Virus record (IMG/VR): IMGVR_UViG_3300046542_000248
Location: 1 to 64,000 of that record
Reading direction: 5' to 3' (one strand)
Length of the DNA stretch: 64,000 bases
The translations under genes and the position numbers were made by a program. This document shows positions 9,619 to 51,183 of this stretch, piece by piece (the first letter of the stretch is position 1; each line of letters begins with the position of its first letter). A model generated the notes under the pieces. That model was not told the origin of the DNA. It saw nothing but the letters and a program-made list of their open reading frames with translations, and did not search any database.

Positions 9619-11199
9619 TTAAAATTTAGCAACTCTTGAAAGGTTTTGGAATACGGGGATTCCGTCGCCAGGCTTCGGTTGCTTCGTCATTTGGTAGACT
9701 GTTTGGACGAAGTCCCTCTGAATGATTCTAGAGTTCTGTCCAATGAGCGTCATGATGTACTTCTTATCATTCATATATCTAGCAGCATCTTCATTGGCTT
9801 CTTCTGTAAGAGCGGCAGCCAGTGTAAGCATATCACCATCATAATCTCCACCCAATCCTGGTAGATAACTATTATGAACGTGAAGAGTATCAATAAATGA
9901 AATACTACTATTCTTATTGATCTCAATGTCTGGATAATAATCATAGTACTTATCACCAATCAATACAGATATAGTTTTCTTAGTAGTAAGAATAGTAAAT
10001 TTAGAAGGATTTACACCAAAGTTATCTTCAATTGGATAACGAGTGAAGTAAACGTGCTTTTCAGATAATCTGTCGTTACACACAATGAATAGGATATCTG
10101 TCCAAGTCAATGGGCGTGTTACAGAAGTTTGAGCTTGACCAAATCTTCCTGTCAAATATAGATTACCTTTTCTTCCTTCTTCATTTTCAGGAAGTTCGAT
10201 AGCTTTGAATCTGGAAGAAGTACCGTAGATGAACTTTTTGATCATCTTAATGATATATTCTTCAGAAGTATAATATTCGGGATTTGTTAATGTGAGATAC
10301 TCAACCTCACCTTTTTCATTCCTATATGGGTATTTACCCGATAGTTGGAATTCATTTTCTAAAAACTCTTTTACACCATGAATTACAAATGGCATAAAGA
10401 TAGCACAGATACTGGCAAGAGGAACACCAATTCGTCCAAATCTAACTTGAACTTGATCGTAAGTTTCTCCTCTGATAATTGGTGCAGAGATTACTAGTCG
10501 AGCACCTAAGTCTGTATTCTTACCCATTACAAACTTTTTAAAAGTACCATTCTTTGCTCTAAGTTGAGAATCAATGATTTGGTCATGAATCTCATTCAGA
10601 GTAAATTGGATACGAGCTTTGGAGATATTGGATGTTAGACCATATTGCGCTTGTTGAGTTACGCTGTTAACCTGACGAATAATGAATAGATATTTATCGT
10701 TCAATTCATCGTAAGAAGGACGTCCCTCTTCATTATAGTTTACATCACGATAGAAAGCAGGTAGAACGATCCAAGAAGATACCCAGGAGTTCTCTCTATC
10801 TGCTAAGTTCTTAATTCTTTCAGTAGCGAAGACCGACTTACGTTCTTTGAACTCAAGTTTATCCCAGTTATCATATAGGAAATCAAGCCCTGTTTCACCA
10901 TTAGGATCAGGAGTTAATTTCCCATTTTTAATGGAAAATGTCTGTGTTCCTGTAGCACAACTCTCGAAATTCCTATCTAATCGACTAAGATTATAGAACG
11001 TAAGAGGATGTAGATAATGTCCTTTTAAATCAATAAATGCTGGAATGTTCTGACGCTCATAAGAGGTTTGACCGAAGATTCCATAAGAGAATAGAGAATC
11101 ATCCGTTGGCAATCCTTTATCAATAGGAATTGGTCCAGAAACAGGTCTTAGCCCGTTAATAGCAACAACTCTATCAACCCGTGCTTTATGAAGTTTCAA
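9619..11199 (-). CDS. rpoC: Second phage RNA polymerase beta' N-terminal subunit, probably virion RNAP (vRNAP)
   Basis: LFSYGIFG, HYLHP, VLPAFYRD, MGKNTDLGARLVIS, FTRYP and catalytic LGGDYDGD; no Zn ribbon; co-transcribed behind an AACA-N6-TA promoter. Confidence 0.88.
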   Translation of the reverse strand: MKLHKARVDRVVAINGLRPVSGPIPIDKGLPTDDSLFSYGIFGQTSYERQNIPAFIDLKGHYLHPLTFYNLSRLDRNFESCATGTQTFSIKNGKLTPDPNGETGLDFLYDNWDKLEFKERKSVFATERIKNLADRENSWVSSWIVLPAFYRDVNYNEEGRPSYDELNDKYLFIIRQVNSVTQQAQYGLTSNISKARIQFTLNEIHDQIIDSQLRAKNGTFKKFVMGKNTDLGARLVISAPIIRGETYDQVQVRFGRIGVPLASICAIFMPFVIHGVKEFLENEFQLSGKYPYRNEKGEVEYLTLTNPEYYTSEEYIIKMIKKFIYGTSSRFKAIELPENEEGRKGNLYLTGRFGQAQTSVTRPLTWTDILFIVCNDRLSEKHVYFTRYPIEDNFGVNPSKFTILTTKKTISVLIGDKYYDYYPDIEINKNSSISFIDTLHVHNSYLPGLGGDYDGDMLTLAAALTEEANEDAARYMNDKKYIMTLIGQNSRIIQRDFVQTVYQMTKQPKPGDGIPVFQNLSRVAKF

Positions 11200-11672: not shown

Positions 11673-12047
11673 CTATTTATCATAAAACTTAAGTCCTAGT
11701 TTTGCATATGGATATTTGCGACGCATCGCACCATACTCATCCATGTCAATAAATTTTACTTTAATATCTTTAAAGAATAACTCATTGTAATCATCTATTA
11801 GGATGCAAGCTTGATAGATTGCACCCATAATAGCTATTTGATTTTGGTCTAGATTTTTAATAGGGGTTGCATTAAATTCTCGAATCAACGTTCTAATCTT
11901 TTCAGTCCTTACAACTTGACTGAGTGTTATAAAGCGTTTCTTCTTTACACACAAATGCATTTCCTGTATAAACTTCTTAGGATGCTTATTAGGCTTCGTT
12001 AGATGCTTATACTTTCGCATCTTTTTTATCATATCTTTTGTATTCAC
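11673..12047 (-). CDS. Hypothetical basic protein
   Basis: 124 aa ORF in a minus-strand operon. Confidence 0.65.
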   Translation of the reverse strand: MNTKDMIKKMRKYKHLTKPNKHPKKFIQEMHLCVKKKRFITLSQVVRTEKIRTLIREFNATPIKNLDQNQIAIMGAIYQACILIDDYNELFFKDIKVKFIDMDEYGAMRRKYPYAKLGLKFYDK

Positions 12048-12567
12048 GAATCATATCAAGCAGAATCTCTTCAACAATACCAGTCCAAGGAAGATCCTGG
12101 GTATTTTTACGTTTAATATCATACATAAATATTGTACTGGATAATCCCTTGTCAAAATCATAATGAGCAACACGGCGAATAATCTCCATGTTTTTAAGCT
12201 GCATTCCAGCGGATCTGATATTTATAACCTCGCCTAATGTGAACATCGGTAATGGTACCTCAGTAACAACTTCATCATCTGTCTTATTAGGATAGATAGT
12301 TGCACATGTACCAATAGCTTGTGGTGTACCGTACATTGCAATGTAATCTTGATCGCCCATACGTTTAGTCAATACATATCTTGCATCCATCCAACCAATT
12401 CTTTCATCCATAAATTGATCGGCAGAGATTACAATATCAGCTTCGGTTATTGCACCACCATAACCTTTACAAACATAGGTTTTTAATTGTTCCTCGTTCA
12501 CAAACTCCATAGCTTCTGCTAAGGAGTCTACTAGTGTAGCTCGGTTTGGTCTGAAGATAATTGCCAT
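12007..12567 (-). CDS. Hypothetical protein
   Basis: AGGAGG SD, 186 aa; DERIGW motif. Confidence 0.7.
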   Translation of the reverse strand: MAIIFRPNRATLVDSLAEAMEFVNEEQLKTYVCKGYGGAITEADIVISADQFMDERIGWMDARYVLTKRMGDQDYIAMYGTPQAIGTCATIYPNKTDDEVVTEVPLPMFTLGEVINIRSAGMQLKNMEIIRRVAHYDFDKGLSSTIFMYDIKRKNTQDLPWTGIVEEILLDMIREYKRYDKKDAKV

Positions 12568-12569
12568 GA

Positions 12570-13025
12570 TTAATTTCCTCCTTGAATTGCTTCGAGTATT
12601 TTAATACCGGAGATAACATCATTAACGACATTATCAATTCGATCCATAAACGGTGATTCATAATACTTGATTTTATTATTTACAATATCCTCAGATTTTC
12701 TTTCTACGGGCATTGTTAATTTAGAATTATCTATTTCAAAATATGTATCAGTTGCCAATGCATATTCTTGTGGATTTATTTGATGTACTAATGCCAATTC
12801 AGCATCAGCCCACATCCATCCAATAATAACGCTTATAAAGTAGAATGAAGATTCACGATCTGCATTGCCAACTACTGTGAAAGCATCGTTAAACCCAGAT
12901 AACCGATGAGTTACTTTATAATGAGATAATCCATTCTGATCAAGATGTTCTTGTATCTTATTCATAATAACTTCTACAGTTTGTGATGATTTCTCAGCCC
13001 AACTATTTCCCATAATTTCGCTCAT
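12570..13025 (-). CDS. Hypothetical protein
   Basis: AGGAGG SD, 151 aa. Confidence 0.7.
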   Translation of the reverse strand: MSEIMGNSWAEKSSQTVEVIMNKIQEHLDQNGLSHYKVTHRLSGFNDAFTVVGNADRESSFYFISVIIGWMWADAELALVHQINPQEYALATDTYFEIDNSKLTMPVERKSEDIVNNKIKYYESPFMDRIDNVVNDVISGIKILEAIQGGN

Positions 13026-13026
13026 T

Positions 13027-13614
13027 TTAATTTCCTCCTAATTGATATCTTAATACCCATTTTTCATCAAGGAACGCACGAAATTCTTCAATGAATTCTG
13101 GAGTTAATTTTTGATATTTAGAAATATACTTCCAAGCCACATTATCCTTAAATTCTCTGATAAATGATTCAGATAGTTTCTGATGCATTGATATTTGCAA
13201 CCAGTCAACTTTATATCTGTATTTACGAATAAATGCTTCCGACATAACCTGACATCTACTTGCTACAACCCAGCTGAGTTTATCTCTGTGCTTGGTCATC
13301 ATCTCTTCTGATAGTTTTTGGTGTCTGGATATTACATCCCAAACAGATGGTTTATCAGTTAGATCGTACATATCTTCTGAAAATACCTGATGTTTTGCTA
13401 AAACTCTTAGTGGGAATTTTTTAGTATGAAGATTTCTCTTCATAAATTCAGGACTAAGATCCATATAGGTCATTGCACCATTCCAGAGCATCCAGTCAAG
13501 AGGACCTCTCTTCTCTAGAATTTCTTCAGTTACATTCACATAATCTTTTCCACGGTAATTCATTTGCCATTCATTTAATCTTGGATTGGCAGCCATCAGG
13601 TAATCACTCCTCAA
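13027..13614 (-). CDS. Tryptophan-repeat protein
   Basis: About 4 tandem 23-aa repeats W..IS..QKLSE.FI..F.D.V. Confidence 0.75.
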   Translation of the reverse strand: MRSDYLMAANPRLNEWQMNYRGKDYVNVTEEILEKRGPLDWMLWNGAMTYMDLSPEFMKRNLHTKKFPLRVLAKHQVFSEDMYDLTDKPSVWDVISRHQKLSEEMMTKHRDKLSWVVASRCQVMSEAFIRKYRYKVDWLQISMHQKLSESFIREFKDNVAWKYISKYQKLTPEFIEEFRAFLDEKWVLRYQLGGN

Positions 13615-13626
13615 TAAATTTAGTAG

Positions 13627-14388
13627 TTACTTCAATTTTATTCTCTTAGCAAATATAGGTTTAAACCTATCACATCCGCCAAGAATTTGTTCAATATCTT
13701 CATCGACTAATAAAAGTCTGTCGATTGTAGATCCCCAGAGAATAGATGCTGAAAATCCCCATCTATAATCTACGCCACTTAAATAACTTTTTGAATCTAT
13801 GTAGGTCCATAAGGAAAGATCCTCATCGACGTGCCATACAGGATTTGTAATACGAAGGTCTAACTTTCTTAACATATTTTTAATATTTCTTCCATAGCAT
13901 AGATCCAATATGGACATATTAACATTGCCCATAGAGAAGCAAGGAAGACGAGTTGTTGCACAGACATTTGGGCAATGGACCTTGATAGAATTAAAGGTCT
14001 TGCCACCGTAATAAGTTTCACCAATAATAACAATACCAGTATCGACGTTATAAGCTAATAATTGATAATCATTGCCGTAATCACTTTGGAACGGTCTTTC
14101 AAATCCAATCTTATAATTTAACAATTTTAGTACTTCTATAAATTCATCGTAACCAATATCATTATAATAATCATAAGCAATATTAATAGCTTCAACCATA
14201 ATAAACTTTTCACTTTCTTTAATAACATTTGTTACCTTTGCATATCCAATTTTAATGTCAGGACAATTAACAATAATAATTACTTTTCCAAATTCGGTAT
14301 AAGAAATAAAGGACTCATTTTTTCCAGGTTGGATAAGGATAATGTCGTCAAGTTTAATTTGACTTCTAACTTCAGTTACAAATGTCAT
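13627..14388 (-). CDS. Hypothetical protein
   Basis: GGAGG SD, 253 aa, first gene after an early-type promoter. Confidence 0.7.
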   Translation of the reverse strand: MTFVTEVRSQIKLDDIILIQPGKNESFISYTEFGKVIIIVNCPDIKIGYAKVTNVIKESEKFIMVEAINIAYDYYNDIGYDEFIEVLKLLNYKIGFERPFQSDYGNDYQLLAYNVDTGIVIIGETYYGGKTFNSIKVHCPNVCATTRLPCFSMGNVNMSILDLCYGRNIKNMLRKLDLRITNPVWHVDEDLSLWTYIDSKSYLSGVDYRWGFSASILWGSTIDRLLLVDEDIEQILGGCDRFKPIFAKRIKLK

Positions 14389-14430
14389 CTGTAGATCCTC
14401 CGATGGTTTTAGTAGTATTATTCACTATAT

Positions 14431-14444
14431 AATAATATATATTT
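14431..14444 (-). promoter_or_regulatory. Putative early promoter
   Basis: Minus strand AAATATATATTATT. Confidence 0.7.
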
Positions 14445-14477
14445 TATTATCCTAGGTACTTCGGTTACAAAAAAAAA

Positions 14478-14505
14478 GAGAAGTTCTGCTACTCAGCAGA
14501 ACCTC
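14478..14505 (-). terminator. Intrinsic terminator
   Basis: GTTCTGCT...AGCAGAAC stem, T-run on the minus strand. Confidence 0.65.
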
Positions 14506-14511
14506 CGTATA

Positions 14512-14949
14512 TTATTTATTACTGGTTAAGACATCCAACTTTTTAACCACCTGTAATCCATGTGTCCCCGTTGTAATCTGTACGGTAGATTGAGCAACTG
14601 CATAACCTTTCTTGAGTAGAAACTCAAATAAATCTTTTGCCATTTCAGGAGTTTTGCAGTATATAATATCTACCACGTTGGTTTGTTTCTGTCTTTCTGA
14701 AAATGGAACTGCACCCATAATCTTGTCTTTAAGTTTAATATATCCTTCAATGACTACTTCATTTTCACTATTGAAAATTTGTTCTTCACCTTCTGCACCG
14801 AATGCTTGCCAAACTTGTTGAACACACTCTTCTGCTTGGTCTAATGTTAATTGTTGACCTTGATCAATTGCATTGGTGATATTGTTAACTGCCATAAATC
14901 CTGTAAAGCATTTTATAATACGATCTGTTTCTTGGCGTTTTGTTTCCAT
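14512..14949 (-). CDS. Hypothetical early protein
   Basis: GGAGG SD; monocistronic between a promoter and a terminator. Confidence 0.75.
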   Translation of the reverse strand: METKRQETDRIIKCFTGFMAVNNITNAIDQGQQLTLDQAEECVQQVWQAFGAEGEEQIFNSENEVVIEGYIKLKDKIMGAVPFSERQKQTNVVDIIYCKTPEMAKDLFEFLLKKGYAVAQSTVQITTGTHGLQVVKKLDVLTSNK

Positions 14950-15055: not shown

Positions 15056-15412
15056 TTATTCTTCTTCCACCTTAGTGAACTTAACCTTAATTCCACTAGA
15101 CGTTTCCACAATAGTCACTTTAAAATCGTCAGATTCAAGATACTTCACCCTAAATTTTTTGGTTTCAAGGTATTCCATAATCTTTTTAGACGCTTTTCCA
15201 GGAAGGGAAATAGGGAAGGTTAATTCATCATTAAACACTTCAGGATTTTTAAACTTACATTTGTCAAGTATACTAGCACGTTTCAATATGTTATACAGCG
15301 AATAGCATTCCGAGTAATACGTTGGGATGAGTAAATCGAATATTTCTTCACTGTAAGAATTATTCTTTTTGATTAATTCTAGCAGCATATCAACCCGTGT
15401 CATATCATCCAT
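15056..15412 (-). CDS. Hypothetical protein in tail/baseplate operon
   Basis: AAGGGAGG SD, 118 aa. Confidence 0.7.
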   Translation of the reverse strand: MDDMTRVDMLLELIKKNNSYSEEIFDLLIPTYYSECYSLYNILKRASILDKCKFKNPEVFNDELTFPISLPGKASKKIMEYLETKKFRVKYLESDDFKVTIVETSSGIKVKFTKVEEE

Positions 15413-15427
15413 CTGCGCTCCTCCCTT

Positions 15428-15799
15428 CTATTTCCTATTCTGGTTAGAGCGCCTTTGCTCTTTCAGTTGCTCTTCCAGTTGCCTTTGTTCCATTTGTTTT
15501 CTATTTTTCTCGACGAATATGCGTCGTCGTTCAAGTTCAGATAGTAATTCCCGTAAAGGCATATTAGTTATCTTATCTTCAGAAAAGATGGCAGAGAGGA
15601 AATCGCGAGCGAAATCCAATAGCTTTTGATATTCCTCTATCCGCCTTGCTGCTACTTGCTTTCGTTTAAGGATTTCAGCTTTTCGCTGTTCTTGCGTTTC
15701 TCCAAGTTGTTCTTCATCCCCCTTATTCGGGACAAAGTAAAAAGCAAGTCGTCCATCTTTTGCCGTTGCTGTTTGTGAACACGTCCACAAGCAGGGCAA
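15428..15799 (-). CDS. T4 gp51-like / tail-assembly-chaperone downstream ORF, probably expressed by -1 frameshift from the upstream gene
   Basis: SEDKITNMPLRELLSELERR resembles the gp51-type motif; 148-nt overlap in the -1 frame; no convincing own start. Confidence 0.5.
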   Translation of the reverse strand: MPCLWTCSQTATAKDGRLAFYFVPNKGDEEQLGETQEQRKAEILKRKQVAARRIEEYQKLLDFARDFLSAIFSEDKITNMPLRELLSELERRRIFVEKNRKQMEQRQLEEQLKEQRRSNQNRK

Positions 15800-17256
15800 G
15801 TGAACCCTTTAATCCCGTATTGGATCTCCTTGGAGTTATCATATTCTTCGATTTGATTATCAATTTCATTGTGAGTTTCAGGTTCCATACCGATAAGAAC
15901 TTCGATAAGTTCCTCGATAGTATCATATTTCAGATACTCGCCATCAGGAGTTGGTAGACCAATGTATTCGATGAACATGAGGTATCCAAATACTACATTC
16001 AAGTTCGTAGTGTCTTTATTGGATTTAGTAACCCAGTTCTCGATTTTACTCATAGTAGTCAAACGATCATACAGGGAAGGAATACGAATTCCGACTACTG
16101 TGTAATCACTAAGAGTAACTTGCTTGATTTTGGACAATTTAGTTTGTTTGATAACATCCTTAATGTCCATATTTTGATATAGAATCGTGTCGATCTCTTC
16201 TTTGAATTCATCGCTGTTCAGAACAAGGTCTGCGCTATGAACTTTCAAGTTAAGGTCGATCTTACATTTTTCGTTAGCGCAATTCATCGGATAGTCGTTT
16301 TCTTCAGGGAATGTGGATACAAACATATTGAAGTAAAGTGTTTGCTCATCTTTGTAGTGAATAACCTTCATGAGATCTTGAAGATTTACCACTTTACCAA
16401 AAGATGTATCAACCAAATGCTTCTTGATTACGCTGAGTTTCTTAAACTCAAGCTCAAGAATGGATCTAGGGTTTTCGATGTTTGCAATTGCAATGATTTC
16501 TGGAATTGCAGCACCGGAAAGTGTAAGATGGAAGCCAGAGTTAACCAATGGAGTAGTAACATGGTTATGGCGTTGTGTGTAAGTCTTAAGCAGCGCTTGC
16601 TTAAGGTTACCCTTTTTGCTTGTTTTGAATTTAACTTCATTGGTTTCAAGTACGCCTTTAACCGTTTCTTCATACGTCTTATTGCGTTTAATTTCTACAC
16701 GCAATGCAGATGAAGTACGATCAAATTCTTTCGTCGCACCAGTTAATTCAGTATCAATAGCGTCGGCAAATTTACGTTCAATTTCACGGAATGCCCGTTC
16801 TTGAACATCTTCATCATCTTCAGCAGAATCTTGACCTTCAGCATCACGAAGAAGTGCCATGAATTCGTTATCTTCTTCAGATATTTCTTCTTCTGTGCGT
16901 TCTTCGATATATTCTTGTGCTTTGATTGCATCAGAAGTAAGTTCAGTTTTACCTTCAAGTTCACGAACACGGTTGATTTCACGAACTGTTTCAAGCTGCT
17001 GTTGAACTAGACCTTTATCAAGATCGTCCATTACTTTATCAGGATTTCCGCCGTTTTTAACAAATTCTTTGTGTTCCGACGAAAGATCTTTATACCATTG
17101 CGTTTGCATAAGCTCATCCAACGCTTTACGAGCTTCGTCAGTCATTGCAGGCTGTGTTGGACCTGTAATAGTACCGTCACCGGTTTTCTCATTCATCAAT
17201 TCTGTCATTGCCGTCCGTAATGTGGAATCTTGTTCCTTTGGATTTTGATCGTTCAT
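15652..17256 (-). CDS. T4 gp26-like baseplate hub / tail assembly protein
   Basis: Acidic N-terminal extension, C...C (CANEKC), RIPSL, C-terminal CPACG...DDLLF pattern typical of gp26-like proteins; next to a gp25-like gene. Confidence 0.5.
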   Translation of the reverse strand: MNDQNPKEQDSTLRTAMTELMNEKTGDGTITGPTQPAMTDEARKALDELMQTQWYKDLSSEHKEFVKNGGNPDKVMDDLDKGLVQQQLETVREINRVRELEGKTELTSDAIKAQEYIEERTEEEISEEDNEFMALLRDAEGQDSAEDDEDVQERAFREIERKFADAIDTELTGATKEFDRTSSALRVEIKRNKTYEETVKGVLETNEVKFKTSKKGNLKQALLKTYTQRHNHVTTPLVNSGFHLTLSGAAIPEIIAIANIENPRSILELEFKKLSVIKKHLVDTSFGKVVNLQDLMKVIHYKDEQTLYFNMFVSTFPEENDYPMNCANEKCKIDLNLKVHSADLVLNSDEFKEEIDTILYQNMDIKDVIKQTKLSKIKQVTLSDYTVVGIRIPSLYDRLTTMSKIENWVTKSNKDTTNLNVVFGYLMFIEYIGLPTPDGEYLKYDTIEELIEVLIGMEPETHNEIDNQIEEYDNSKEIQYGIKGFTCPACGRVHKQQRQKMDDLLFTLSRIRGMKNNLEKRKNSEKLKSLNESK

Positions 17257-17324
17257 ATTGTCTCAATCTCCTTCTAATTGGAATTAATGTAGTTTTTAGA
17301 CTGTTTTTAAAATTATTTTCAATC

Positions 17325-17687
17325 TTACACCGTAGACACTGTTAGTAGCACATCATCGCCATTTGTATTGAACAGAACAATCTCGTTAAAGCTCGGAGAC
17401 TGTATTCCGATATATAATTCCGAATCTTTTAGTTCGATAATCATATCATTGATAGAGAAATCACAGTATTCTTCTACCTGCTTATTTATCACAACTTTAA
17501 GATCATTGGCTACATCTTCAGAGAATGATACACGATATTGACCTATATCTATTCCCTTTTCCAAATCATCAGAATGATCACCTGGTTTCATAACCAATAA
17601 AATATATAACTGCATAGCCATCGCAAATGCGCCAGTATATACTTTACCTTTTGAAAATTCATCAATTTCAAATCCAACGTCTTTCAT
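17325..17687 (-). CDS. gp25-like baseplate wedge protein
   Basis: 120 aa; LLVMKPGDH...GIDIGQY...INKQVEEY matches the gp25/GpW pattern (L.t.pGe.P..GI.l..y). Confidence 0.6.
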   Translation of the reverse strand: MKDVGFEIDEFSKGKVYTGAFAMAMQLYILLVMKPGDHSDDLEKGIDIGQYRVSFSEDVANDLKVVINKQVEEYCDFSINDMIIELKDSELYIGIQSPSFNEIVLFNTNGDDVLLTVSTV

Positions 17688-17689
17688 GC

Positions 17690-17980
17690 TTATTCCTCCT
17701 CATCAAAACTATATTTATCTTTTGGAATTTCCGGTAAATCAACAGTGGTTCCTGATAATGAGTGTGTTGAATCTGATAGAAATTCTATTTTGCCATCTCT
17801 AATGAAAAGATGACAGGATGCGGGTTTGGTTGGAGTTGGACCTGTTAATAGTGAACCCTGCACATCAGGCTTATCAGTAAAATCCTTATTAAATCCCCAA
17901 CCTTCACCAAATGAGTGTAATGTTTCACAACCTGGGCAATACATAAGGTATGTGCTAGTACCTGCTTGTCTTATTTTCAT
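17690..17980 (-). CDS. Cys/His metal-binding protein, DUF6527-like (paralog 1)
   Basis: CPGC..LH...W.FN...P.V..S...CHLFIRDGKI.FL.DSTH. Confidence 0.65.
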   Translation of the reverse strand: MKIRQAGTSTYLMYCPGCETLHSFGEGWGFNKDFTDKPDVQGSLLTGPTPTKPASCHLFIRDGKIEFLSDSTHSLSGTTVDLPEIPKDKYSFDEEE

Positions 17981-18282
17981 TCTATTTCCTCCTTATCTGT
18001 AAACCACTCATCTTCAGGGAGAAGATCAATAGTTTTATTTGCAAATTTATGAGTAGTATCTCCAAGATATTGAATCTTTCCATCATTAATGAAACTATGA
18101 CAATTGAACCTTTGCCCTCCTCTAACTCCATCTATTACATATGAAGGAGATATCGTTGGGAGTTCCATATTACCATTAAATTGCCAACGACTGTCTATAC
18201 CGTGCAAGAATTCACATCCCTGGCAATAGAATATATAATTAAAATTTGGATCATTATCAGGCATCTTTCTGAATCTTGACAT
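17977..18282 (-). CDS. Cys/His metal-binding protein, DUF6527-like (paralog 2)
   Basis: CQGC..LH...WQFNGN..LPTISPS...CHSFINDGKIQYLGDTTH. Confidence 0.65.
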   Translation of the reverse strand: MSRFRKMPDNDPNFNYIFYCQGCEFLHGIDSRWQFNGNMELPTISPSYVIDGVRGGQRFNCHSFINDGKIQYLGDTTHKFANKTIDLLPEDEWFTDKEEIE

Positions 18283-18375: not shown

Positions 18376-19737
18376 GTGAAATGTCCAATTTGCAGGAAAC
18401 CTATTCAATATAAAAAGGATATGATTCATCATCTCCATTTAAGACATGCAAGAGAACTTCCTGAGAATGTGAGTCCGGCAAAGTTTCTATTCTCTTCAAC
18501 CCATGGTGGAAGAACTGGTGGCTCTTGTCGAGTATGTAACAGTGAAACTTTATTCGATGAGAAAATCGGTAGACCTAGAGTATTTTGTACTAATCCTAAA
18601 TGTAAAGAGGCATTTGCCACTATTGCACAATCCAGGAACATAGAGAAATATGGAGTTCCACATCTATTAAACAACCAAAAACATCAGATGTTTATGCTTT
18701 CTAAAAGAAAGATCTCTGGTGAATATGATTGGTCTGATGGAAGAACTAAGATTCCATACGTTGGATCTTATGAAAGAAAATTTTTTGAGTTCTTAGATAA
18801 CTTCATGGATTTCGATCCATCGGTAATTCATTCCCCATGTCCTTTTGATATTCAATATGAATTTGAAGGTGAAATGCATACGTATACACCTGATGTTTAT
18901 ATTGATATCGTTGATCTCGTCGTTGAGATTAAACATGGTGGTGACAATCCTAATAATCATCATAAGATTCAAGCTGTTGATGTAGCTAAGGATAAAGCTA
19001 AGCAGGAAGCTATTAAAAAATCCACTAATCACAATTTCATTAAGATTGTGGATAATAAATTCGGACCTTTCCTCAAAGCAATGTTTAAATTAGTAGAAGA
19101 TGAAAAGTATGAAAGCAAACAAAGATTGTTTGTGATTAATGAATCTTCTCAAACTATAGCTGCTATAAGAGAAGCAGCCTCATCACCTCCACTTACTGGG
19201 ATTCCTGTTGCCCCTAAAGCTGATCCTGATTCTAGATATAATACACAGGTTTCTGTGAATATGTTCACTGCACTGGGTGGAGCTGCAAAATGTCCATCTA
19301 TGAAAGAAACTCAATCTCTTGCTAGTATTCATCCAATAGTCACTGGCTTTATTGGTCGAGAGATTGACGGTAATGAAAAGCCACTCTATATTACAGTATT
19401 TAATGATAGCAGTGATAATTACACAATTGGTGTAGCTATTGATCGCATGCGTGATCCTGCAATATATGAAAATAGTAAATTTATAACTTTTCTAGGTTCA
19501 GGTGATAGATTGGATGGTCAGGATTACTCAGTCTATAAGTATATTGGCAACGGTAATTATGATGAAAAACAATTCCTTAAAGCCTGTTATGAAACTACTG
19601 AACATCCATATGGTTCAGATGTAGAGGCATTTACTACTATATTAGAATCCGTATTCAAAAGACCTTTATATAATGTGGGTCAATTACTTATGAATCCAGA
19701 ATTCGTTAAAATTAAACAAGGAAGGGTTGAATACTAA
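18376..19737 (+). CDS. C2H2/C4 zinc-finger plus PD-(D/E)xK (TnsA-like) nuclease fused to a C-terminal domain of unknown function
   Basis: CPIC..HLHLRH, CRVC, CTNPKC; GSYERKF...YTPDVY...VVEIK; INE|SS and IRE|AA sites separate the halves. Confidence 0.7.
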   Translation: MKCPICRKPIQYKKDMIHHLHLRHARELPENVSPAKFLFSSTHGGRTGGSCRVCNSETLFDEKIGRPRVFCTNPKCKEAFATIAQSRNIEKYGVPHLLNNQKHQMFMLSKRKISGEYDWSDGRTKIPYVGSYERKFFEFLDNFMDFDPSVIHSPCPFDIQYEFEGEMHTYTPDVYIDIVDLVVEIKHGGDNPNNHHKIQAVDVAKDKAKQEAIKKSTNHNFIKIVDNKFGPFLKAMFKLVEDEKYESKQRLFVINESSQTIAAIREAASSPPLTGIPVAPKADPDSRYNTQVSVNMFTALGGAAKCPSMKETQSLASIHPIVTGFIGREIDGNEKPLYITVFNDSSDNYTIGVAIDRMRDPAIYENSKFITFLGSGDRLDGQDYSVYKYIGNGNYDEKQFLKACYETTEHPYGSDVEAFTTILESVFKRPLYNVGQLLMNPEFVKIKQGRVEY

Positions 19738-46203: not shown

Positions 46204-49200
46204 GTGAAAGATAATATGCCACCAGATGTAACGAAGATTAGCTTTGCTAACTTTTTTAATGTATTCACGGATACATCTAAGATGCAAAATAATGAGTTAG
46301 CGTTTGATTCCAGCTATCGGCTAGTATATAAAGATAATACTGGCGTACTACGAAATATCGTAAGTGTAAACGACTATGCAAATATTTATGCTCCAAATTC
46401 TGTAAATATTACACAAATTGTAAAATCTGCTAAAGTTGGTGTTGGTACTGAGGGCGATTTTTCAGCTAAAGTAACCAAATCAATGCCGTTAAGTAATATT
46501 GTCACAGCAACTGGTATTCATAATAGACTTATGCTAGTTCAGTATGACAATAATAACAATCTTAAAGATACCATTCTATTCCCTGAATATTTCTGTAAAC
46601 TTGGTACTTATGCTGATACAATGGATATCAATAAAGGTATTATTACCGAGATTATTAGAAAAGTAAAGATTGATGCTAATTTGGGAGTAACTACTCTTAC
46701 AAATAACAAAATCTTTAAAATCTATTTAACTGAAACTACGGATGTTGCAACTACTTTAAATCTTCCTCTAACAGTTGAAGCTAATAAAGATGTGATTGCA
46801 AATCGTAACCAAATGTATATTGGTGCTGACGGATATCTTTATATTATCAAAGATAAGGCTGTATCTGACCTGACGTATTCATTCTGGGTATTTAATAGAC
46901 GTACTACTAGTGTTAAGGTTAAAGTTAATACTACGATTCCTTTGCTAGAAAAAAATGATAATTTTGTTTTTGAATCTTACAGATACGTGTCTGATAACAT
47001 CGTTGGTACATCATACCAATTTGTGGGTTCAGGTGAAACTGTACAGATCACTAAGATATTATCAGCAATTAAAACAAGCAGTCTTGGTAAAGAGGATGTT
47101 ACTCTTACTATCTCTGGTGATAAAAAGAGTGTTAATGGCATTCAAAATGGTGCATATTATACAATCAATGTAATCACCGATGAAACTCCTGTTATCCCAT
47201 CTTTAGTATATCAATTCTTGGATGTTCAAGATGGTTTCTTTGGTTATTTATATACCATTCTTAAAAGTATCAATGATAATGAACATCAAACTCCTATTGA
47301 TATTGATGCTATCGTTGAAACAGTTCGACTTGCTTTATTATCATATATGGATGATAAACTTCTTCCTAAAGCTGATTTGGATTCTCCTAACTTTATTGGA
47401 GTTCCTAAAGTTCCTACAGCCGCTGTTAATACTAATACTACTCAAGCAGCATCAACTGCATGGGTTATTGGTCAAGCCAGTTCAGCTTCACCGTTAATGG
47501 ATGGTGCTGCGACAATTGGTGTTTCTCTTAAATATTCTAGAGAAGATCACGTGCATCCTATTGACACAAGTAGAGCGCCTGCGGCTTCTCCTACATTTAC
47601 TGGAACTGTAACTATTCCTACCGCTGGTGTTAACACTAATACTACTCAAGCAGCATCTACTGCATTCGTTATTGGTCAAGCAGCAACAGCAACTCCTCTT
47701 ATGGCTGGTGTTGCAGCTGTTGGTACTGCTACTAGATTTGCTAGAGAAGATCATAAGCATCCCATTGATACATCTAGAGCAGCAGTGGATTCACCTACAT
47801 TTACTACAATAGTAAAAACTCCTGATATTGATATGCTTGGCAATGAACTTTGGAACTCTGCAAATCTACCTATAATAAATATGATACCAGATTCTGGTAG
47901 ATTTATGGGCAATCAGCAAGATCCATATGCAATTCAATCAGGCATTGCATTTACTATTAATAATGAATTTTTTGCCCCATATAATGGAGGAAATAATTCT
48001 ACTGGTGGTAAATTTATTCATAATAATACAGATAATGGTGGTTCTGCTGGAAGCATGACTGCTGATGCGATTGCACTTGTGAATGCGATGAATACTATTG
48101 CTGGAGCAGATAAAAGATATGGAGCAGAATTTCATATTCTTGATATTACTCAAGGTTCTGGTACATCACTTCCGCATGCAACTAACACATCGCATTATCT
48201 TTTAACTACAAATAACTCTAAAAATATAGCAGGTGGCGGTGATTATTTCACATTCAGCTTCTGGGTTAGACTTAAAACCGGATCTGGTGCCACAATTAGT
48301 AGAAGTATAAAATTGGCTAAAAATGGTATTGATGTCACTGCATCATTTTTAAACATTTCAACGGCTGATGGTTGGATGCATATTCAATCCGTTTATAAAC
48401 CATCGACAGGGTATGATAATACCGCTCCTCAAATTTATGCACCTAGTGGTGCTGTTATCGAAATTGCAATACCTGTTATAGCTTCTGGTGGATCTGGTAC
48501 TGGTATTCATACGTCACCAATTCCAAGACTGGATCTCGGGTTTACTGCTGCATCTACGGCTTCACCTACATTTACTGGAACTGTAACATTACCAGCTACG
48601 ACGTCCATTGGACCAGTAACTGCTACTGAACTTGGATATATTTCTGGAGTAACTAGTTCTATTCAAACACAGTTAAATGCTAGAGCAACATCTGCTTCTC
48701 CTACATTTACTGGAACTGTAACTATTCCTACCGCTGCTGTTAATACTAATACTACTCAAGCTGCTTCTACTGCTTTCGTGTTAGGTCAAGCAGCAACTGC
48801 TTCTCCATTAATGGCTGGTGTTGCAACTGTTGGTACAGCTACTAAATTTGCTAGAGAAGATCATGTACATCCTAGTGACACTTCTAGAGCACCTACGGCT
48901 TCTCCTACATTTACTGGAACTGTAACTATTCCTACAGCTGCTGTTAATACTAATACTACTCAAGCTGCTTCTACTGCTTTCGTATTAGGTCAAGCTGGCT
49001 CTGCTTCTCCTGTTATGAATGGCACTGCAACTGTTGGTGTTGCAACTAAATTTGCTAGAGAAGATCATGTACATCCTAGTGATACAGCTAAAGCAGATAC
49101 TGCTTCTCCTACATTTACTGGGACTGTAACTATTCCTACTGCCGCTGTTAATACTAATACTACTCAAGCAGCTTCTACTGCATTCGTTATTGGTCAAGCT

Positions 49201-51183
49201 GGCTCTGCGGCACCATTGATGTCTGGTACTGCAACTGTTGGTACAGCTACTAAATTTTCTAGGGAAGATCATATTCACCCTAGTGACACAAGTAGAGCAC
49301 CTGCGGCTTCTCCTACTTTTACTGGGACTGTAACTATTCCTACGGCAACTGTTAATACTAATACGACTCAAGCTGCTTCTACTGCATTCGTTATTGGTCA
49401 AGCAGCAACTGCTTCTCCTCTTATGGCAGGCACTGCAACTGTTGGTGTTGCAACTAGATTTGCTAGAGAAGATCATATTCATCCTAGTGATACGTCTAGA
49501 GCACCTACGGCTTCTCCTACATTTACTGGGATTGTAACTGTTCCTACACCAGCAAATGGTGATAATTCAACAAAAGCTGCAACAACTGCCTTTATTAATA
49601 ACTTATTGTCAGGGAATAGTATTTCTGATGGTATTACTTGGACAGCACGAACAAGTGCTGCTGATAATCAATGGCAGTCAATCTGTTATGGTAATGGATT
49701 ATATGTAGCAGTTGCTGGAACTGGTACGGGTAACAGGGTCATGACTTCCCCTGACGGTATTACTTGGACAACAAGAACAAGTGCTGCTGATAATAGCTGG
49801 GTTTCTGTTTGTTATGGTAATGGATTATTTGTAGCAGTTGCTTATGGTAGTTCCCCAAATACTGTTATGACATCAACTGATGGTATTACTTGGACAATAA
49901 GAAGTTCTGGTAGTTGGTTAAGAGCAGTTTGTTATGGTAATGGATTATTTGTGGCTGTAACTGATACTACTAGTGTTATGACATCTCCTGATGGTATTAC
50001 TTGGTCAACAAGAACGGGTGCCAATGCTAATCAATGGAATTCAGTTATTTATGCTGCTGGATTATTTGTAGCCGTAGCGTCTACTGGTACTGGTAATAGA
50101 GTTATGACATCACCTGATGGTATCACCTGGACAGCACGAACAAGTGCTGCTGATAATGGTTGGTATTCAATTTGTTATGGTGCTGGTTTATTTGTAGCCG
50201 TTGCGATTGATGGTACAGGTAACCGTGTAATGACATCTCCTGATGCTATCACTTGGACAATAAGAACAAGTGCTGCTGATGTTGTTTGGAGATCAGTTGC
50301 TTATGGTGGTGGAATATTTGTAGCTGTTGCACAATCATCTACATTAATGACATCTCCTGATGGTATCACTTGGACCGCAAGAACGGCTTCTTCTGGTAAT
50401 AACTGGTTTTCAGTCTGTTATAATAACGGTTTATTTGTAGCTGTAGCAACTTCAGGTACAGGTAATAGAGTTATGACAAATAGTGGAACCCCGGCAGCAC
50501 CACTATCAGTTACTACTGCCGCTGTTAATACTAATACAAATCAAATAGCATCTACAGCGTTTGTATTAGGTCAAGCAGCAACTGCTTCCCCATTAATGGA
50601 TGGAGTTGCAACTGTCGGTACTTCTACTAAATTTGCTAGAGAAGATCATGTTCATGCTAGTGACACTTCTAGAGCACCTACGGCTTCACCTACATTTACT
50701 GGAACTGTAGTATTACCTTCAACTACTAGTATCGGTTCTGTAACTGCAACTGAACTTGGATACTTATCCGGTGTAACTAGCTCTATTCAAACACAATTAA
50801 ATGCTAGAGCAACATCTGCTTCTCCTACATTTACTGGAACTGTGATCGCTCCTACACCAGCAGTTGATAATAGTTCTACTCAAGTATCAACAACTGCATG
50901 GTATATGGGTCAACGTGCACCAAGTGTACCTGTTATGAATGGAGCTGCTGCAATAGGGTCATCTTTAAAATGGGCAGCTTCTGACCATGTTCATCCAAGT
51001 GATACAAGCAGAGCGGCTGCGGCTTCTCCTACTATTACAGGAGTTCTTACAGCAAGTGGTTCTATCGTAACTCCTTTAATCACTGCAAATGCTGTTGAGG
51101 TAAAATCTAGTGCTACCACTAAGAAATTTACTTTAGATTATAATGAAACTGAAGATTCACTTGATTTTATCTATACACCGTAA
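46204..51183 (+). CDS. Long tail fibre protein with HxH fibre repeats and one 7-bladed beta-propeller
   Basis: Repeated SPTFTG..PT....NTTQAASTAFV and AREDHxHP; 7 W..VCYGNG.FVAV...TSPDGITW blades; C-terminal YNETEDSLDF; start 46204 or 46216. Confidence 0.85.
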   Translation: MKDNMPPDVTKISFANFFNVFTDTSKMQNNELAFDSSYRLVYKDNTGVLRNIVSVNDYANIYAPNSVNITQIVKSAKVGVGTEGDFSAKVTKSMPLSNIVTATGIHNRLMLVQYDNNNNLKDTILFPEYFCKLGTYADTMDINKGIITEIIRKVKIDANLGVTTLTNNKIFKIYLTETTDVATTLNLPLTVEANKDVIANRNQMYIGADGYLYIIKDKAVSDLTYSFWVFNRRTTSVKVKVNTTIPLLEKNDNFVFESYRYVSDNIVGTSYQFVGSGETVQITKILSAIKTSSLGKEDVTLTISGDKKSVNGIQNGAYYTINVITDETPVIPSLVYQFLDVQDGFFGYLYTILKSINDNEHQTPIDIDAIVETVRLALLSYMDDKLLPKADLDSPNFIGVPKVPTAAVNTNTTQAASTAWVIGQASSASPLMDGAATIGVSLKYSREDHVHPIDTSRAPAASPTFTGTVTIPTAGVNTNTTQAASTAFVIGQAATATPLMAGVAAVGTATRFAREDHKHPIDTSRAAVDSPTFTTIVKTPDIDMLGNELWNSANLPIINMIPDSGRFMGNQQDPYAIQSGIAFTINNEFFAPYNGGNNSTGGKFIHNNTDNGGSAGSMTADAIALVNAMNTIAGADKRYGAEFHILDITQGSGTSLPHATNTSHYLLTTNNSKNIAGGGDYFTFSFWVRLKTGSGATISRSIKLAKNGIDVTASFLNISTADGWMHIQSVYKPSTGYDNTAPQIYAPSGAVIEIAIPVIASGGSGTGIHTSPIPRLDLGFTAASTASPTFTGTVTLPATTSIGPVTATELGYISGVTSSIQTQLNARATSASPTFTGTVTIPTAAVNTNTTQAASTAFVLGQAATASPLMAGVATVGTATKFAREDHVHPSDTSRAPTASPTFTGTVTIPTAAVNTNTTQAASTAFVLGQAGSASPVMNGTATVGVATKFAREDHVHPSDTAKADTASPTFTGTVTIPTAAVNTNTTQAASTAFVIGQAGSAAPLMSGTATVGTATKFSREDHIHPSDTSRAPAASPTFTGTVTIPTATVNTNTTQAASTAFVIGQAATASPLMAGTATVGVATRFAREDHIHPSDTSRAPTASPTFTGIVTVPTPANGDNSTKAATTAFINNLLSGNSISDGITWTARTSAADNQWQSICYGNGLYVAVAGTGTGNRVMTSPDGITWTTRTSAADNSWVSVCYGNGLFVAVAYGSSPNTVMTSTDGITWTIRSSGSWLRAVCYGNGLFVAVTDTTSVMTSPDGITWSTRTGANANQWNSVIYAAGLFVAVASTGTGNRVMTSPDGITWTARTSAADNGWYSICYGAGLFVAVAIDGTGNRVMTSPDAITWTIRTSAADVVWRSVAYGGGIFVAVAQSSTLMTSPDGITWTARTASSGNNWFSVCYNNGLFVAVATSGTGNRVMTNSGTPAAPLSVTTAAVNTNTNQIASTAFVLGQAATASPLMDGVATVGTSTKFAREDHVHASDTSRAPTASPTFTGTVVLPSTTSIGSVTATELGYLSGVTSSIQTQLNARATSASPTFTGTVIAPTPAVDNSSTQVSTTAWYMGQRAPSVPVMNGAAAIGSSLKWAASDHVHPSDTSRAAAASPTITGVLTASGSIVTPLITANAVEVKSSATTKKFTLDYNETEDSLDFIYTP
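48697..49512 (+). repeat. Four tandem 204-bp (68-aa) coding repeats in the tail fibre
   Basis: TCTCCTAC unit starts at 48697, 48901, 49105, 49309 and 49513, exactly 204 nt apart. Confidence 0.9.
49633..50478 (+). repeat. Seven ~126-bp blade repeats (one beta-propeller)
   Basis: Seven W-x-x-[VI]-[CAI]-Y units with Asp-box-like TSPDGITW. Confidence 0.85.

What the first reader, a model, noticed from the sequence alone, without database searches (positions are those of the whole stretch)
15428..15799. Probable programmed -1 ribosomal frameshift joining gp26-like and gp51-like tail assembly ORFs
Seen in sequence (minus strand): the last 148 nt of the 534-aa ORF overlap an open -1 frame. After ...CTT TTT ACT TTG TCC CGA ATA AGG GGG, the zero frame uses atypical G/C-ending codons (AAG AAC AAC TTG GAG...AGC AAG). 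The -1 frame uses this genome's usual A/T-ending codons (GAA GAA CAA CTT GGA GAA...GCT GAA ATC CTT AAA) and encodes a charged helical domain with no good start. Candidate slip runs are T5 (forward 15739-15743) and G5 (forward 15718-15722). Established: tail assembly chaperones (lambda gpG/gpGT, P2, Mu) use -1 frameshifts. Inference: a short form and a fusion of about 610 aa are made; the slip sites are non-canonical heptamers.
Basis: partly seen in the sequence, partly recalled or inferred. Interest (0 to 1): 0.65.

Follow-up and report, generated by a model that had tools for sequence, protein, structure and literature searches.

The report
Conserved -1 frameshift in jumbo-phage baseplate gene
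A baseplate-assembly-like gene of this soil jumbo phage, and of its relatives including Bacillus phage AR9, very probably makes a second, longer protein by a ribosome slipping back one base on a conserved run of T's; public annotations list this as two separate genes.

Summary
The 534-aa ORF (15652..17256, minus strand) overlaps an open -1 frame by 148 nt. Its zero-frame tail has abnormal G/C-ending codons (GC3 0.71 against 0.34 in the gene body), while the -1 frame looks normal (0.32).

Comparison of about 23 homologous loci supports a programmed -1 frameshift at the T run (window 15739-15743, codons CTT TTT). These are 14 distinct metagenomic relatives, 3 more distant ones, and Bacillus AR9 and BpSp, Staphylococcus PALS_2, MarsHill and AH12, and Yersinia phiR1-37.
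- The Leu, Phe and nearby Ser codons are invariant at synonymous sites, while neighbouring invariant residues vary freely.
- The small ORF is always in the -1 frame.
- That frame is open from the T run onward in all lineages but one.
- From the T run it is 100-104 codons long in the window's own clade, and those sequences align without gaps.
- It has no conserved start codon and no Shine-Dalgarno sequence in the window or its 13 closest relatives.
- It is under purifying selection upstream of any candidate start.

The predicted products are 534 aa and 609 aa (506 + 103 residues, the addition being a helical hairpin). The G5 site is not conserved and is rejected.

The gp26-like label has only structural support. 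The gp51-like label has none. No conserved stimulatory RNA structure was shown, and there is no RNA or protein evidence.

The parts
15652..17256 (-). Zero-frame gene, 534 aa (P0001). The N-terminal ~170 residues are predicted to be disordered or helical. The C-terminal domain (~230-500) has four invariant Cys (C326, C331, C487, C490). Its predicted fold resembles T4-like baseplate hub assembly proteins.
   Evidence: phrog_18873 of unknown function; no Pfam match
15738..15744 (-). Proposed slip site C TTT TTA. The zero-frame codons are CTT (15744-15742), TTT (15741-15739) and A of ACT. tRNA-Phe on UUU re-pairs one base back on UUU (15742-15740), and the next codon read is UAC (15739-15737).
   Evidence: NTT TT[T/C] is kept in all ~23 lineages. 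CTT is used at 13/13 Leu and TTT at 14/14 Phe, against within-gene usage of 13-54% and 19-71%. In six window-clade loci (L001, L005, L010, L015, L017, L018), -1-frame stops lie 10 nt 5' of the Phe codon.
15428..15739 (-). Trans-frame (-1) segment read after the shift: 103 codons (YFVPNKGDEE...SNQNRK) plus stop TAG 15430-15428. The predicted structure is a coil of ~10 residues followed by a helix-turn-helix hairpin.
   Evidence: The length from the slip site is 100-104 codons in 14 lineages, and the alignment A3 is gapless. pN/pS is 0.32 upstream of the conserved ATGs.
15652..15741 (-). Dual-coding overlap: zero-frame tail of 28 codons plus stop, and -1 codons 1-29.
   Evidence: Zero-frame synonymous conservation is 0.80 here, against a gene median of 0.54 and a maximum of 0.75 in any other window. 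pS is depressed to 0.44 in both frames. GC3 is 0.71 in the zero frame against 0.32 in the -1 frame.
15712..15737 (-). 9-bp hairpin (CUUUGUCCC / 8-nt loop / GGGAUGAAG) that starts one base after the slip motif. It is a possible stimulator but is unproven.
   Evidence: -12.4 kcal/mol, z -2.3. It is 94% paired in the 7 close relatives, but there is only one compensatory pair and 166/500 shuffles do as well. It is not conserved in distant relatives, and RNAalifold finds no consensus structure.
15652..15654 (-). Zero-frame stop codon TAG, which ends the 534-aa short form.
17325..17687 (-). Upstream 120-aa ORF in the position of the gp25-like baseplate wedge gene of AR9, BpSp and MarsHill. This is synteny context, not part of the recoding signal.
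   Evidence: Synteny. Direct similarity to AR9 gp231 is not significant (E 0.53).
15056..15412 (-). Downstream 118-aa ORF with a strong Shine-Dalgarno sequence (GGGAGGAG) 6 nt before its ATG. It is the next conserved gene of the module.

Best explanation
The gene at 15652..17256(-) is a recoded gene.

The two products. Most ribosomes read it in the zero frame and stop at TAG 15652-15654, giving a 534-aa protein. A fraction slip one base backwards when tRNA-Phe sits on UUU (15741-15739), preceded by U 15742. These ribosomes continue in the -1 frame to TAG 15430-15428. The result is a 609-aa protein: residues 1-506 of the short form, then a ~10-residue linker, then a 90-residue helical hairpin.

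What the comparisons show (not inferred):
- the slip motif is conserved;
- the -1 frame relation, its openness and its length are conserved;
- there is no conserved initiation signal;
- both frames are under selection in the overlap.

What is inferred:
- The shift is ribosomal, by single-tRNA P-site slippage on U_UUY rather than tandem slippage.
- Its efficiency is unknown.
- Both isoforms act in baseplate hub assembly. In this reading the protein is a gp26-like, non-virion chaperone, and the added hairpin is a docking or oligomerisation module, by analogy with lambda G/GT.
For: (1) Slip motif. In 14 distinct relatives (34-78% aa identity) the codons are CTT/ATT TTT A. AR9 has CTT TTT C, BpSp CTT TTT TTT, PALS_2 and MarsHill CTT TTT C, AH12 CTT TTC and phiR1-37 CTT TTT A. 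L031-L033 have ATT TTT A or CTT TTT TTC. From each gene's own codon usage, the product of the chances of CTT and TTT over 14 lineages is about 1e-12. The motif holds even in lineages with 44-48% GC, where TTT is 19-27% of Phe codons. Invariant Gly, Cys, Pro, Cys and His codons a few positions upstream vary freely at third positions (19/91 to 46/91 identical pairs), against 78/78 and 91/91 at the motif.

(2) Frame. The small ORF is in the -1 frame in every lineage. It is open from the motif to its end in 14 of 15 window-clade loci and in all 9 others, although -1 stops occur about every 4 codons elsewhere.

(3) Length. The -1 reading frame from the motif is 100-104 codons in all 14 lineages and aligns without gaps. 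The zero-frame tail varies from 23 to 33 codons, and is 7-10 in AR9-like phages.

(4) No initiation signal. No ATG, GTG or TTG with a Shine-Dalgarno core lies near the start of the -1 ORF in any window-clade relative, in a genome where Shine-Dalgarno use is the rule. Annotators and gene callers chose CTG, TTG, GTG or ATG at 12 different positions.

(5) Translation upstream of candidate starts. pN/pS is 0.32 for -1 codons 30-51, the same as for codons 52-95 (0.30). AlphaFold puts one continuous helix over residues 11-49, which spans the zero-frame stop and TTG 15619.

(6) Dual coding. Zero-frame synonymous conservation is the highest of the whole gene in the overlap. The codon bias follows the -1 frame.

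(7) The sequence is not an assembly error.
Against: - There is no RNA, ribosome-profiling or protein evidence. Only one DNA run holds this genome.
- The motif is a tetranucleotide, not an X XXY YYZ heptamer. NNT TTY occurs 101 times and NTT TTT 9 times in 11,345 codons of this window's long ORFs. The motif alone therefore cannot make the site special, and some stimulator or context is missing.
- The hairpin next to the site lacks significant covariation and is not conserved in distant relatives. It also starts only 1 nt after the motif, closer than classical stimulators.
- One relative (L016) has a TAG in the -1 frame 13 codons after the motif.
- One distant relative (L032) has GGAGG-N7-ATG inside the overlap, which could start the small protein independently there.
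- No natural in-frame fusion of the two parts was found among 1.84 billion proteins.
Confidence: 0.78

Rival explanations
1. There are two separate genes. The small protein is started independently inside or just after the overlap, at TTG 15619, ATG 15562 or a near-cognate codon, perhaps by termination-reinitiation at the zero-frame stop. On this reading the long overlap is an accident of gene packing.
For: All public annotations treat them as two genes. L032 has GGAGG-N7-ATG in the overlap. L016 carries a -1 stop after the T run yet keeps the small ORF. No in-frame fusion exists in nature.
Against: - No start codon position is shared. The residue at the commonest called start is I, V, A or T across lineages.
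- There is no Shine-Dalgarno core in the window or its 13 relatives.
- The sequence upstream of TTG 15619 is under the same purifying selection as the rest and belongs to one predicted helix.
- This reading does not explain the invariant CTT TTT and TCC codons, the constant -1 phase, the constant 100-104 codon distance from the T run, or the codon bias of the overlap.
Confidence: 0.1
2. Transcriptional slippage. The phage or host RNA polymerase adds one extra U in the T run, so a fraction of mRNAs encode the fusion in a single frame.
For: The product would be identical (LF-YFVP...). Some relatives have longer runs: T8 in BpSp, T7 in L032 and L033. These phages use unusual multisubunit RNA polymerases (phrog_2986 hit at 9619..11199).
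Against: Most lineages have only five T's, and AH12 has four (CTT TTC). From general knowledge, known slippage sites need about 7-9 or more identical bases. There is no RNA data to test this.
Confidence: 0.06
3. There is no second product. The conserved T run and the open -1 frame reflect another constraint, such as a nucleic-acid signal or a requirement of the zero-frame protein, and the small ORF's upstream part is untranslated.
For: L-F-T is conserved as protein sequence. No experimental product is known.
Against: A protein constraint does not fix synonymous positions. A nucleic-acid signal does not explain why stops are absent from the -1 frame for 26-52 codons in 14 of 15 lineages, the gapless protein-like conservation of the -1 frame, or pN/pS of 0.32.
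Confidence: 0.04

Closest known systems
Lambda gpG/gpGT-type tail assembly chaperone frameshift (long-tailed phages)
   Same: A -1 shift near the 3' end of a morphogenesis-chaperone gene gives a minor, C-terminally extended isoform. The arrangement of two overlapping ORFs is conserved even where the sequence is not.
   Different: - It is not homologous.
- It lies in the baseplate module (gp25-like gene upstream, chaperonin downstream in AR9-like phages), not between the tube and tape-measure genes.
- The slip motif is U_UUY, not an X XXY YYZ heptamer.
- The added part is a 90-residue helical hairpin.
T4 gp26 (baseplate hub assembly chaperone; gene 26 also yields the nested product 26')
   Same: - The predicted fold of residues ~230-500 matches viral models annotated as T4-like baseplate hub assembly protein or hub subunit.
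- The C-terminal CPxCG..H knuckle aligns at the same terminal position.
- It sits next to a gp25-like gene.
- T4 gene 26 also gives two products (annotation).
- The homologue is absent from the BpSp virion proteome, and in phiR1-37 it lacks the 'structural protein' note that its upstream neighbours carry. This fits a chaperone role. T4 gp26 and gp51 are listed as hub assembly chaperones in PMC3004832.
   Different: - The sequence family test is not met (PF12322 E 0.31).
- The protein is 2.5 times longer, with a long acidic, helical N-terminal part.
- T4's second product comes from internal in-frame initiation, not from frameshifting.
Single-tRNA (tetranucleotide Z_ZZN) -1 slippage sites, e.g. 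A_AAG in B. subtilis cdd and tetramer motifs studied in E. coli (from my own knowledge; not checked in a paper here)
   Same: Only one tRNA can re-pair perfectly (UUU to UUU). The neighbouring zero-frame codons (CUU before, ACU after) cannot.
   Different: Here the site is conserved across a broad phage clade, and no upstream Shine-Dalgarno-like or downstream structured stimulator could be shown.
AR9 gp230/gp229, BpSp gp286/gp285, MarsHill 176/177, phiR1-37 g241/g242
   Same: These are direct homologues with the same T run, the same -1 phase, an open frame and the same synteny.
   Different: They are annotated as two independent hypothetical proteins with start codons CTG, ATG, TTG and TTG. 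Their zero-frame tail after the motif is only 7-10 codons, and the linker is Ser/Gly-rich (AR9: F-SSSSSGGLKGG).

Membership tests
Canonical tandem-slippage -1 PRF cassette | Heptamer X XXY YYZ in the zero-frame phase, so that both the P- and A-site tRNAs re-pair | tested here: not met
   The zero-frame codons are CTT TTT ACT. Only TTT re-pairs; CTT to GCT and ACT to TAC do not. The neighbouring codons are not conserved in AR9-like phages.
Canonical tandem-slippage -1 PRF cassette | Conserved stimulatory hairpin or pseudoknot 5-9 nt downstream, or a Shine-Dalgarno-like element upstream | tested here: inconclusive
   A 9-bp hairpin is present in the 7 close relatives, but covariation is not significant. 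There is no consensus across 14 relatives. No convincing Shine-Dalgarno-like element is visible upstream (by eye).
Programmed -1 frameshift (general) | Slip-prone motif conserved at synonymous sites, at the 5' edge of a conserved open -1 frame that lacks its own start | tested here: met
Programmed -1 frameshift (general) | Trans-frame protein product demonstrated | not testable with these tools
   No RNA or proteome data for this genome. It needs mass spectrometry, a western blot or a reporter.
Programmed -1 frameshift (general) | Both frames under selection in the overlap | tested here: met
   Synonymous conservation is 0.80 against a median of 0.54. pS is 0.44 in both frames against 0.75-0.84 outside the overlap.
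Lambda G/GT tail assembly chaperones | Homology to G/T families, and a position between the major tail and tape-measure genes | tested here: not met
   No Pfam or PHROG tail-chaperone match. The neighbours are a gp25-like ORF and, in relatives, a chaperonin.
T4 gp26 / Pfam PF12322 T4_baseplate | Sequence match to the family model above the gathering score | tested here: not met
   E 0.31 in 1 of 12 members. No hit in the whole genome. hhalign probability 22%.
T4 gp26 / Pfam PF12322 T4_baseplate | Shared fold | tested here: inconclusive
   Foldseek against BFVD gives E 5e-7 to 1e-4 and TM (target) 0.55-0.62 to models named T4-like baseplate hub assembly protein or hub subunit. Those are predicted models with automatic names, there is no PDB match, and my model has pLDDT 68.
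T4 gp51 | Sequence similarity of the downstream (-1) part to gp51 | tested here: not met
   hhalign probability 0.4%. For the large protein against gp51 it is 8.5%.

The most novel reading that the evidence does not exclude
An ancient recoding event may be maintained across the whole AR9/PBS1-like jumbo-phage lineage, with hosts in Bacillus, Staphylococcus, Yersinia and unknown soil bacteria. It would work from a bare U_UUY tetranucleotide without a classical heptamer or conserved RNA structure. That implies an unrecognised stimulator, such as the conserved nascent peptide M-[DE]-[DE]-x-L-F or a phage-encoded factor. The ratio of the two isoforms would control baseplate hub assembly.
Probability: 0.25. 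Interest if true: 0.8.

Novelty: new variant of a known kind. Interest (0 to 1): 0.62.

Why it matters
If the shift is real, several consequences follow.
- The public records examined here (AR9, BpSp, PALS_2, AH12, MarsHill, phiR1-37), and probably those of their close relatives, misannotate this locus as two hypothetical genes. Some give the small gene odd starts such as CTG.
- One more conserved core gene of these phages gains a defined product and a testable role in baseplate hub assembly.
- It adds a second, non-homologous case to the G/GT paradigm, in which tail morphogenesis uses a fixed ratio of a short and an extended chaperone.
- It offers a naturally conserved tetranucleotide slip site whose stimulator is unknown, which is useful for studying single-tRNA slippage in Gram-positive hosts.
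- Published AR9, phiR1-37 and Staphylococcus jumbo-phage proteomic and RNA-seq data could be re-searched at once.

Tried and rejected
- **G5 run (A AGG GGG) as slip site:** rejected because it is not conserved.
- **TTG 15799 as the start of a 123-aa ORF:** rejected. In L001, L005, L010, L015, L017 and L018 a -1 stop lies between that position and the T run.
- **Assembly or sequencing indel:** rejected (and more than 20 independent genomes).
- **Consensus RNA structure over 14 relatives:** none found. The hairpin in the close clade has no significant covariation.
- **Natural in-frame fusions:** searched with a profile of the -1 product against 1.84 billion proteins. Only short ORFs of 52-103 aa were found, plus one likely coiled-coil false hit.
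- **Fold of the -1 product against BFVD:** nothing below E 0.9.
- **Fold of P0001 against the PDB:** nothing.
- **Nucleotide search of the phage collection:** no match.
- **Sequence tests against T4 gp26, gp51 and PF12322:** not met.
- **Literature:** no paper in the library links a frameshift with AR9, PBS1 or phiR1-37.
- **RNA evidence:** no RNA run holds this DNA.

Full report
**1. The observation**

The sequence is as described. On the minus strand, a 534-aa ORF (17256..15652, P0001) ends with TAG at 15654-15652. The -1 frame is open from 15808 to TAG 15430-15428, so the ORFs overlap by 148 nt. The T5 run is at 15743-15739, read in the zero frame as CTT TTT A. The G5 run is at 15722-15718.

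The 28 zero-frame codons after the T run have GC3 0.71. The rest of the gene has 0.34, and no 28-codon window of it exceeds 0.54. The -1 frame has 0.32 over the same bases.

Elsewhere in this gene the -1 frame has 73 stops, with a median gap of 4 codons and a largest gap of 24. It is nevertheless open for 52 codons before the zero-frame stop.

A second, independent assembly of the only public run that holds this DNA (a rhizosphere metagenome) is identical over 15300-17300.

**2. What the genome and the gene are**

The window is the first 64 kb of a 246.9-kb single-contig virus genome. P0001's only named relatives are hypothetical proteins of the Bacillus jumbo phages AR9 and PBS1 (21% identity).

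The window also encodes:
- an RNA-polymerase beta-subunit-like protein (phrog_2986, E 1e-77, at 9619..11199);
- ribonucleotide reductase;
- giant tail-fibre-like proteins.

P0001 matches only phrog_18873, of unknown function, and no Pfam family. AlphaFold gives a confident C-terminal domain at about residues 230-500 (whole-protein pLDDT 68). That domain has four invariant cysteines.

Foldseek finds uncharacterised proteins of many jumbo phages. At E 5e-7 to 1e-4 and TM about 0.6 it also finds ~250-aa viral models named T4-like baseplate hub assembly protein or hub subunit. Nothing is found in the PDB. hhalign against T4 gp26 aligns only the terminal CPxCG..H knuckle (probability 22%), and gp51 does not align.

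In the five annotated isolate loci I fetched (AR9, BpSp, PALS_2, AH12, MarsHill), the gene order is: gp25-like baseplate protein, this gene, a small ORF, a ~100-aa ORF, then a GroEL-like chaperonin. PhiR1-37 lacks the ~100-aa ORF.

BpSp's virion proteome contains the gp25-like protein but neither of the two genes discussed here (PMC4870245). PhiR1-37's annotation marks the upstream neighbours as structural, but not this gene.

So 'gp26-like baseplate hub chaperone' is a reasonable working label. It rests on fold and synteny, not on sequence.

**3. Comparative test of the frameshift**

I collected three sets of loci:
- 14 distinct relatives of 34-78% identity;
- six isolate phages;
- three more distant contigs found with a profile of the -1 product.

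3a. *The motif.* Every one reads NTT TT[T/C] at the conserved L/I-F residues:
- CTT TTT AC in 12 of the 14;
- ATT TTT AC in L015/L016 and L031;
- CTT TTT AT in L017;
- CTT TTT C in AR9, PALS_2 and MarsHill;
- CTT TTC in AH12;
- CTT TTT TT in BpSp, L032 and L033;
- CTT TTT ACC in phiR1-37.

Within these same genes CTT is 13-54% of Leu codons and TTT is 19-71% of Phe codons. The joint chance over 14 lineages is about 1e-12. As an internal control, invariant Gly, Cys, Pro, Cys and His residues 12-25 codons upstream show ordinary third-position variation. The motif codons, and a Ser TCC three codons later, show none.

3b. *The frame.* The small ORF is in the -1 frame in all lineages, and that frame is open from the motif onward in all but L016. 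In six window-clade loci (L001, L005, L010, L015, L017, L018) a -1 stop lies just 10 nt 5' of the Phe codon. That fixes the 5' limit of any shift at the T run.

3c. *The length.* Counted from the motif, the -1 frame is 100-104 codons in all 14 window-clade relatives and aligns without gaps. The zero-frame tail is 23-33 codons, and only 7-10 in AR9-like phages.

3d. *Starts.* No window-clade relative has an ATG, GTG or TTG with a Shine-Dalgarno core near the beginning of the -1 ORF. In this genome, 69% of ORFs of 100 aa or more have such a core, against 5.6% of internal start-like codons. Annotators chose CTG (AR9), ATG within a truncated ORF (BpSp, AH12) and TTG (PALS_2, MarsHill, phiR1-37). 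In the 1.84-billion-protein library the family appears as 12 short ORFs whose N-termini fall at almost as many different profile positions.

3e. *Selection.* The -1 codons 30-51 lie after the zero-frame stop and before the conserved Met codons. Their pN/pS is 0.32, the same as codons 52-95 (0.30). In the overlap both frames have pN/pS of about 0.55, with pS depressed to 0.44 against 0.75-0.84 nearby. Zero-frame synonymous conservation in the overlap (0.80) is the highest of the whole gene, whose median is 0.54.

3f. *Structure.* The -1 product folds confidently (pLDDT 84) as a coil at residues 1-10, a helix at 11-49 and a helix at 63-103. The first helix runs across the zero-frame stop and across TTG 15619. 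In AR9 the junction would read ...EEMLF-SSSSSGGLKGG..., a typical flexible linker.

**4. Mechanism**

The only perfect re-pairing is tRNA-Phe moving from UUU (or UUC in AH12) to the UUU one base 5'. The codon before (CUU to GCU) and the codon after (ACU to UAC) cannot re-pair, and they are not conserved in AR9-like phages. I therefore propose single-tRNA, P-site -1 slippage on U_UUY. This gives 506 + 103 = 609 residues.

That step is inference, and so is the efficiency. The motif is not rare: NNT TTY occurs 101 times and NTT TTT 9 times in 11,345 codons of long ORFs. Something else must make this site special, or the shift is of low efficiency.

The 9-bp hairpin that starts one base after the motif (15737-15712, -12.4 kcal/mol, z -2.3) is kept in the seven closest relatives. 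It has only one compensatory change and no statistical support. It is not found in distant relatives. It also overlaps the conserved R-G-M / G-D-E codons. Its role is open.

The G5 run straddles the loop and the 3' arm of that hairpin and is not conserved (AAG GAG in L005), so it is not the slip site.

Transcriptional slippage would give the same protein. With four or five T's in most lineages it is unlikely, though I could not test it.

**5. Evidence that does not fit the frameshift**

- L016 is 99.2% identical to L015 over 2.1 kb, but 11 of its 16 differences fall in a 16-nt patch that puts a TAG in the -1 frame 13 codons after the motif. This is either a natural loss of the long form or a local assembly fault.
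- L032 has GGAGG-N7-ATG inside the overlap, so independent initiation may exist in some lineages.
- No natural in-frame fusion exists.
- There are no expression data.

**6. Comparison with known systems, and novelty**

The arrangement works like the lambda G/GT tail-chaperone frameshift, but it is not a member of that family. It fails the heptamer test of the canonical cassette. Its large protein is gp26-like by fold only, and the 'gp51-like' label has no support.

No paper in the searchable library links a frameshift with AR9, PBS1 or phiR1-37, and all the GenBank records seen annotate two genes. I rate it a new variant of a known kind: a conserved, unannotated -1 recoding site with a tetranucleotide motif in the baseplate module of AR9-like jumbo phages.

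My confidence in the trans-frame product is about 0.78. My confidence in the exact slip mechanism is lower.

Noticed in passing
L016:2340-2400 (same contig as L007), compared with L015: The two contigs are 99.2% identical over 2.1 kb, but 11 of the 16 differences cluster in a 16-nt patch (mostly G to A) just after the slip motif. The patch creates a TAG in the -1 frame. It could be a natural knock-out of the long isoform or an assembly artefact.
   Followed up: partly
L003:4731-5121: The relative on a 257.7-kb contig carries a local duplication. A second 72-aa ORF joins the N-terminus of the next gene (MAPLDKSRVDLLLE...) to a near-identical copy of the last ~55 residues of the small -1 ORF.
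   Followed up: no
L024:4720-4920 (AR9 gp229); L025-L029: Public records give the small ORF inconsistent starts: CTG in AR9, and TTG in PALS_2, MarsHill and phiR1-37. BpSp and AH12 have truncated ATG ORFs of 46-50 aa. MarsHill annotates ribosome-binding sites for both neighbours but none for this ORF.
   Followed up: yes
L025:2420-2435 (BpSp); L032, L033: In BpSp the T run is eight long (CTT TTT TTT), and in two metagenomic relatives it is seven long. At those lengths transcriptional slippage becomes conceivable.
   Followed up: no
window 9619-11199 (-): This 526-aa ORF matches phrog_2986, RNA polymerase beta subunit (E 1e-77), but no Pfam family at E 1e-3. It is the split multisubunit RNA polymerase typical of AR9/phiKZ-like jumbo phages. 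In relatives, a ~527-aa gene sits just two genes after the frameshift locus. In this window six extra ORFs (11673-14949) lie between them.
   Followed up: partly
window 17690-18282 (-): Two adjacent small ORFs (96 and 101 aa, overlapping by 4 nt) both match DUF6527 (PF20137). This is a tandem pair upstream of the gp25-position ORF.
   Followed up: no
window 18376-19737 (+): This 453-aa ORF has an N-terminal match to phrog_15137, endonuclease (E 2e-45). It is divergently transcribed from the baseplate module. The AR9 gp232 endonuclease has the same placement.
   Followed up: no
window 46204-51183 and 54867-58658 (+): Giant ORFs (1659 and 1263 aa) carry tail-fibre PHROG segments. The second also has short matches to an HNH-endonuclease PHROG (residues 608-628), which may be repeat or low-complexity matches.
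   Followed up: no
window long ORFs (14 ORFs, 11,345 codons): NNT TTY makes up 101 of 488 Phe codons. That looks lower than the T-ending codon frequency of this AT-rich genome would suggest. It may reflect avoidance of slip-prone U_UUY, but I did not test it against an expectation.
   Followed up: no
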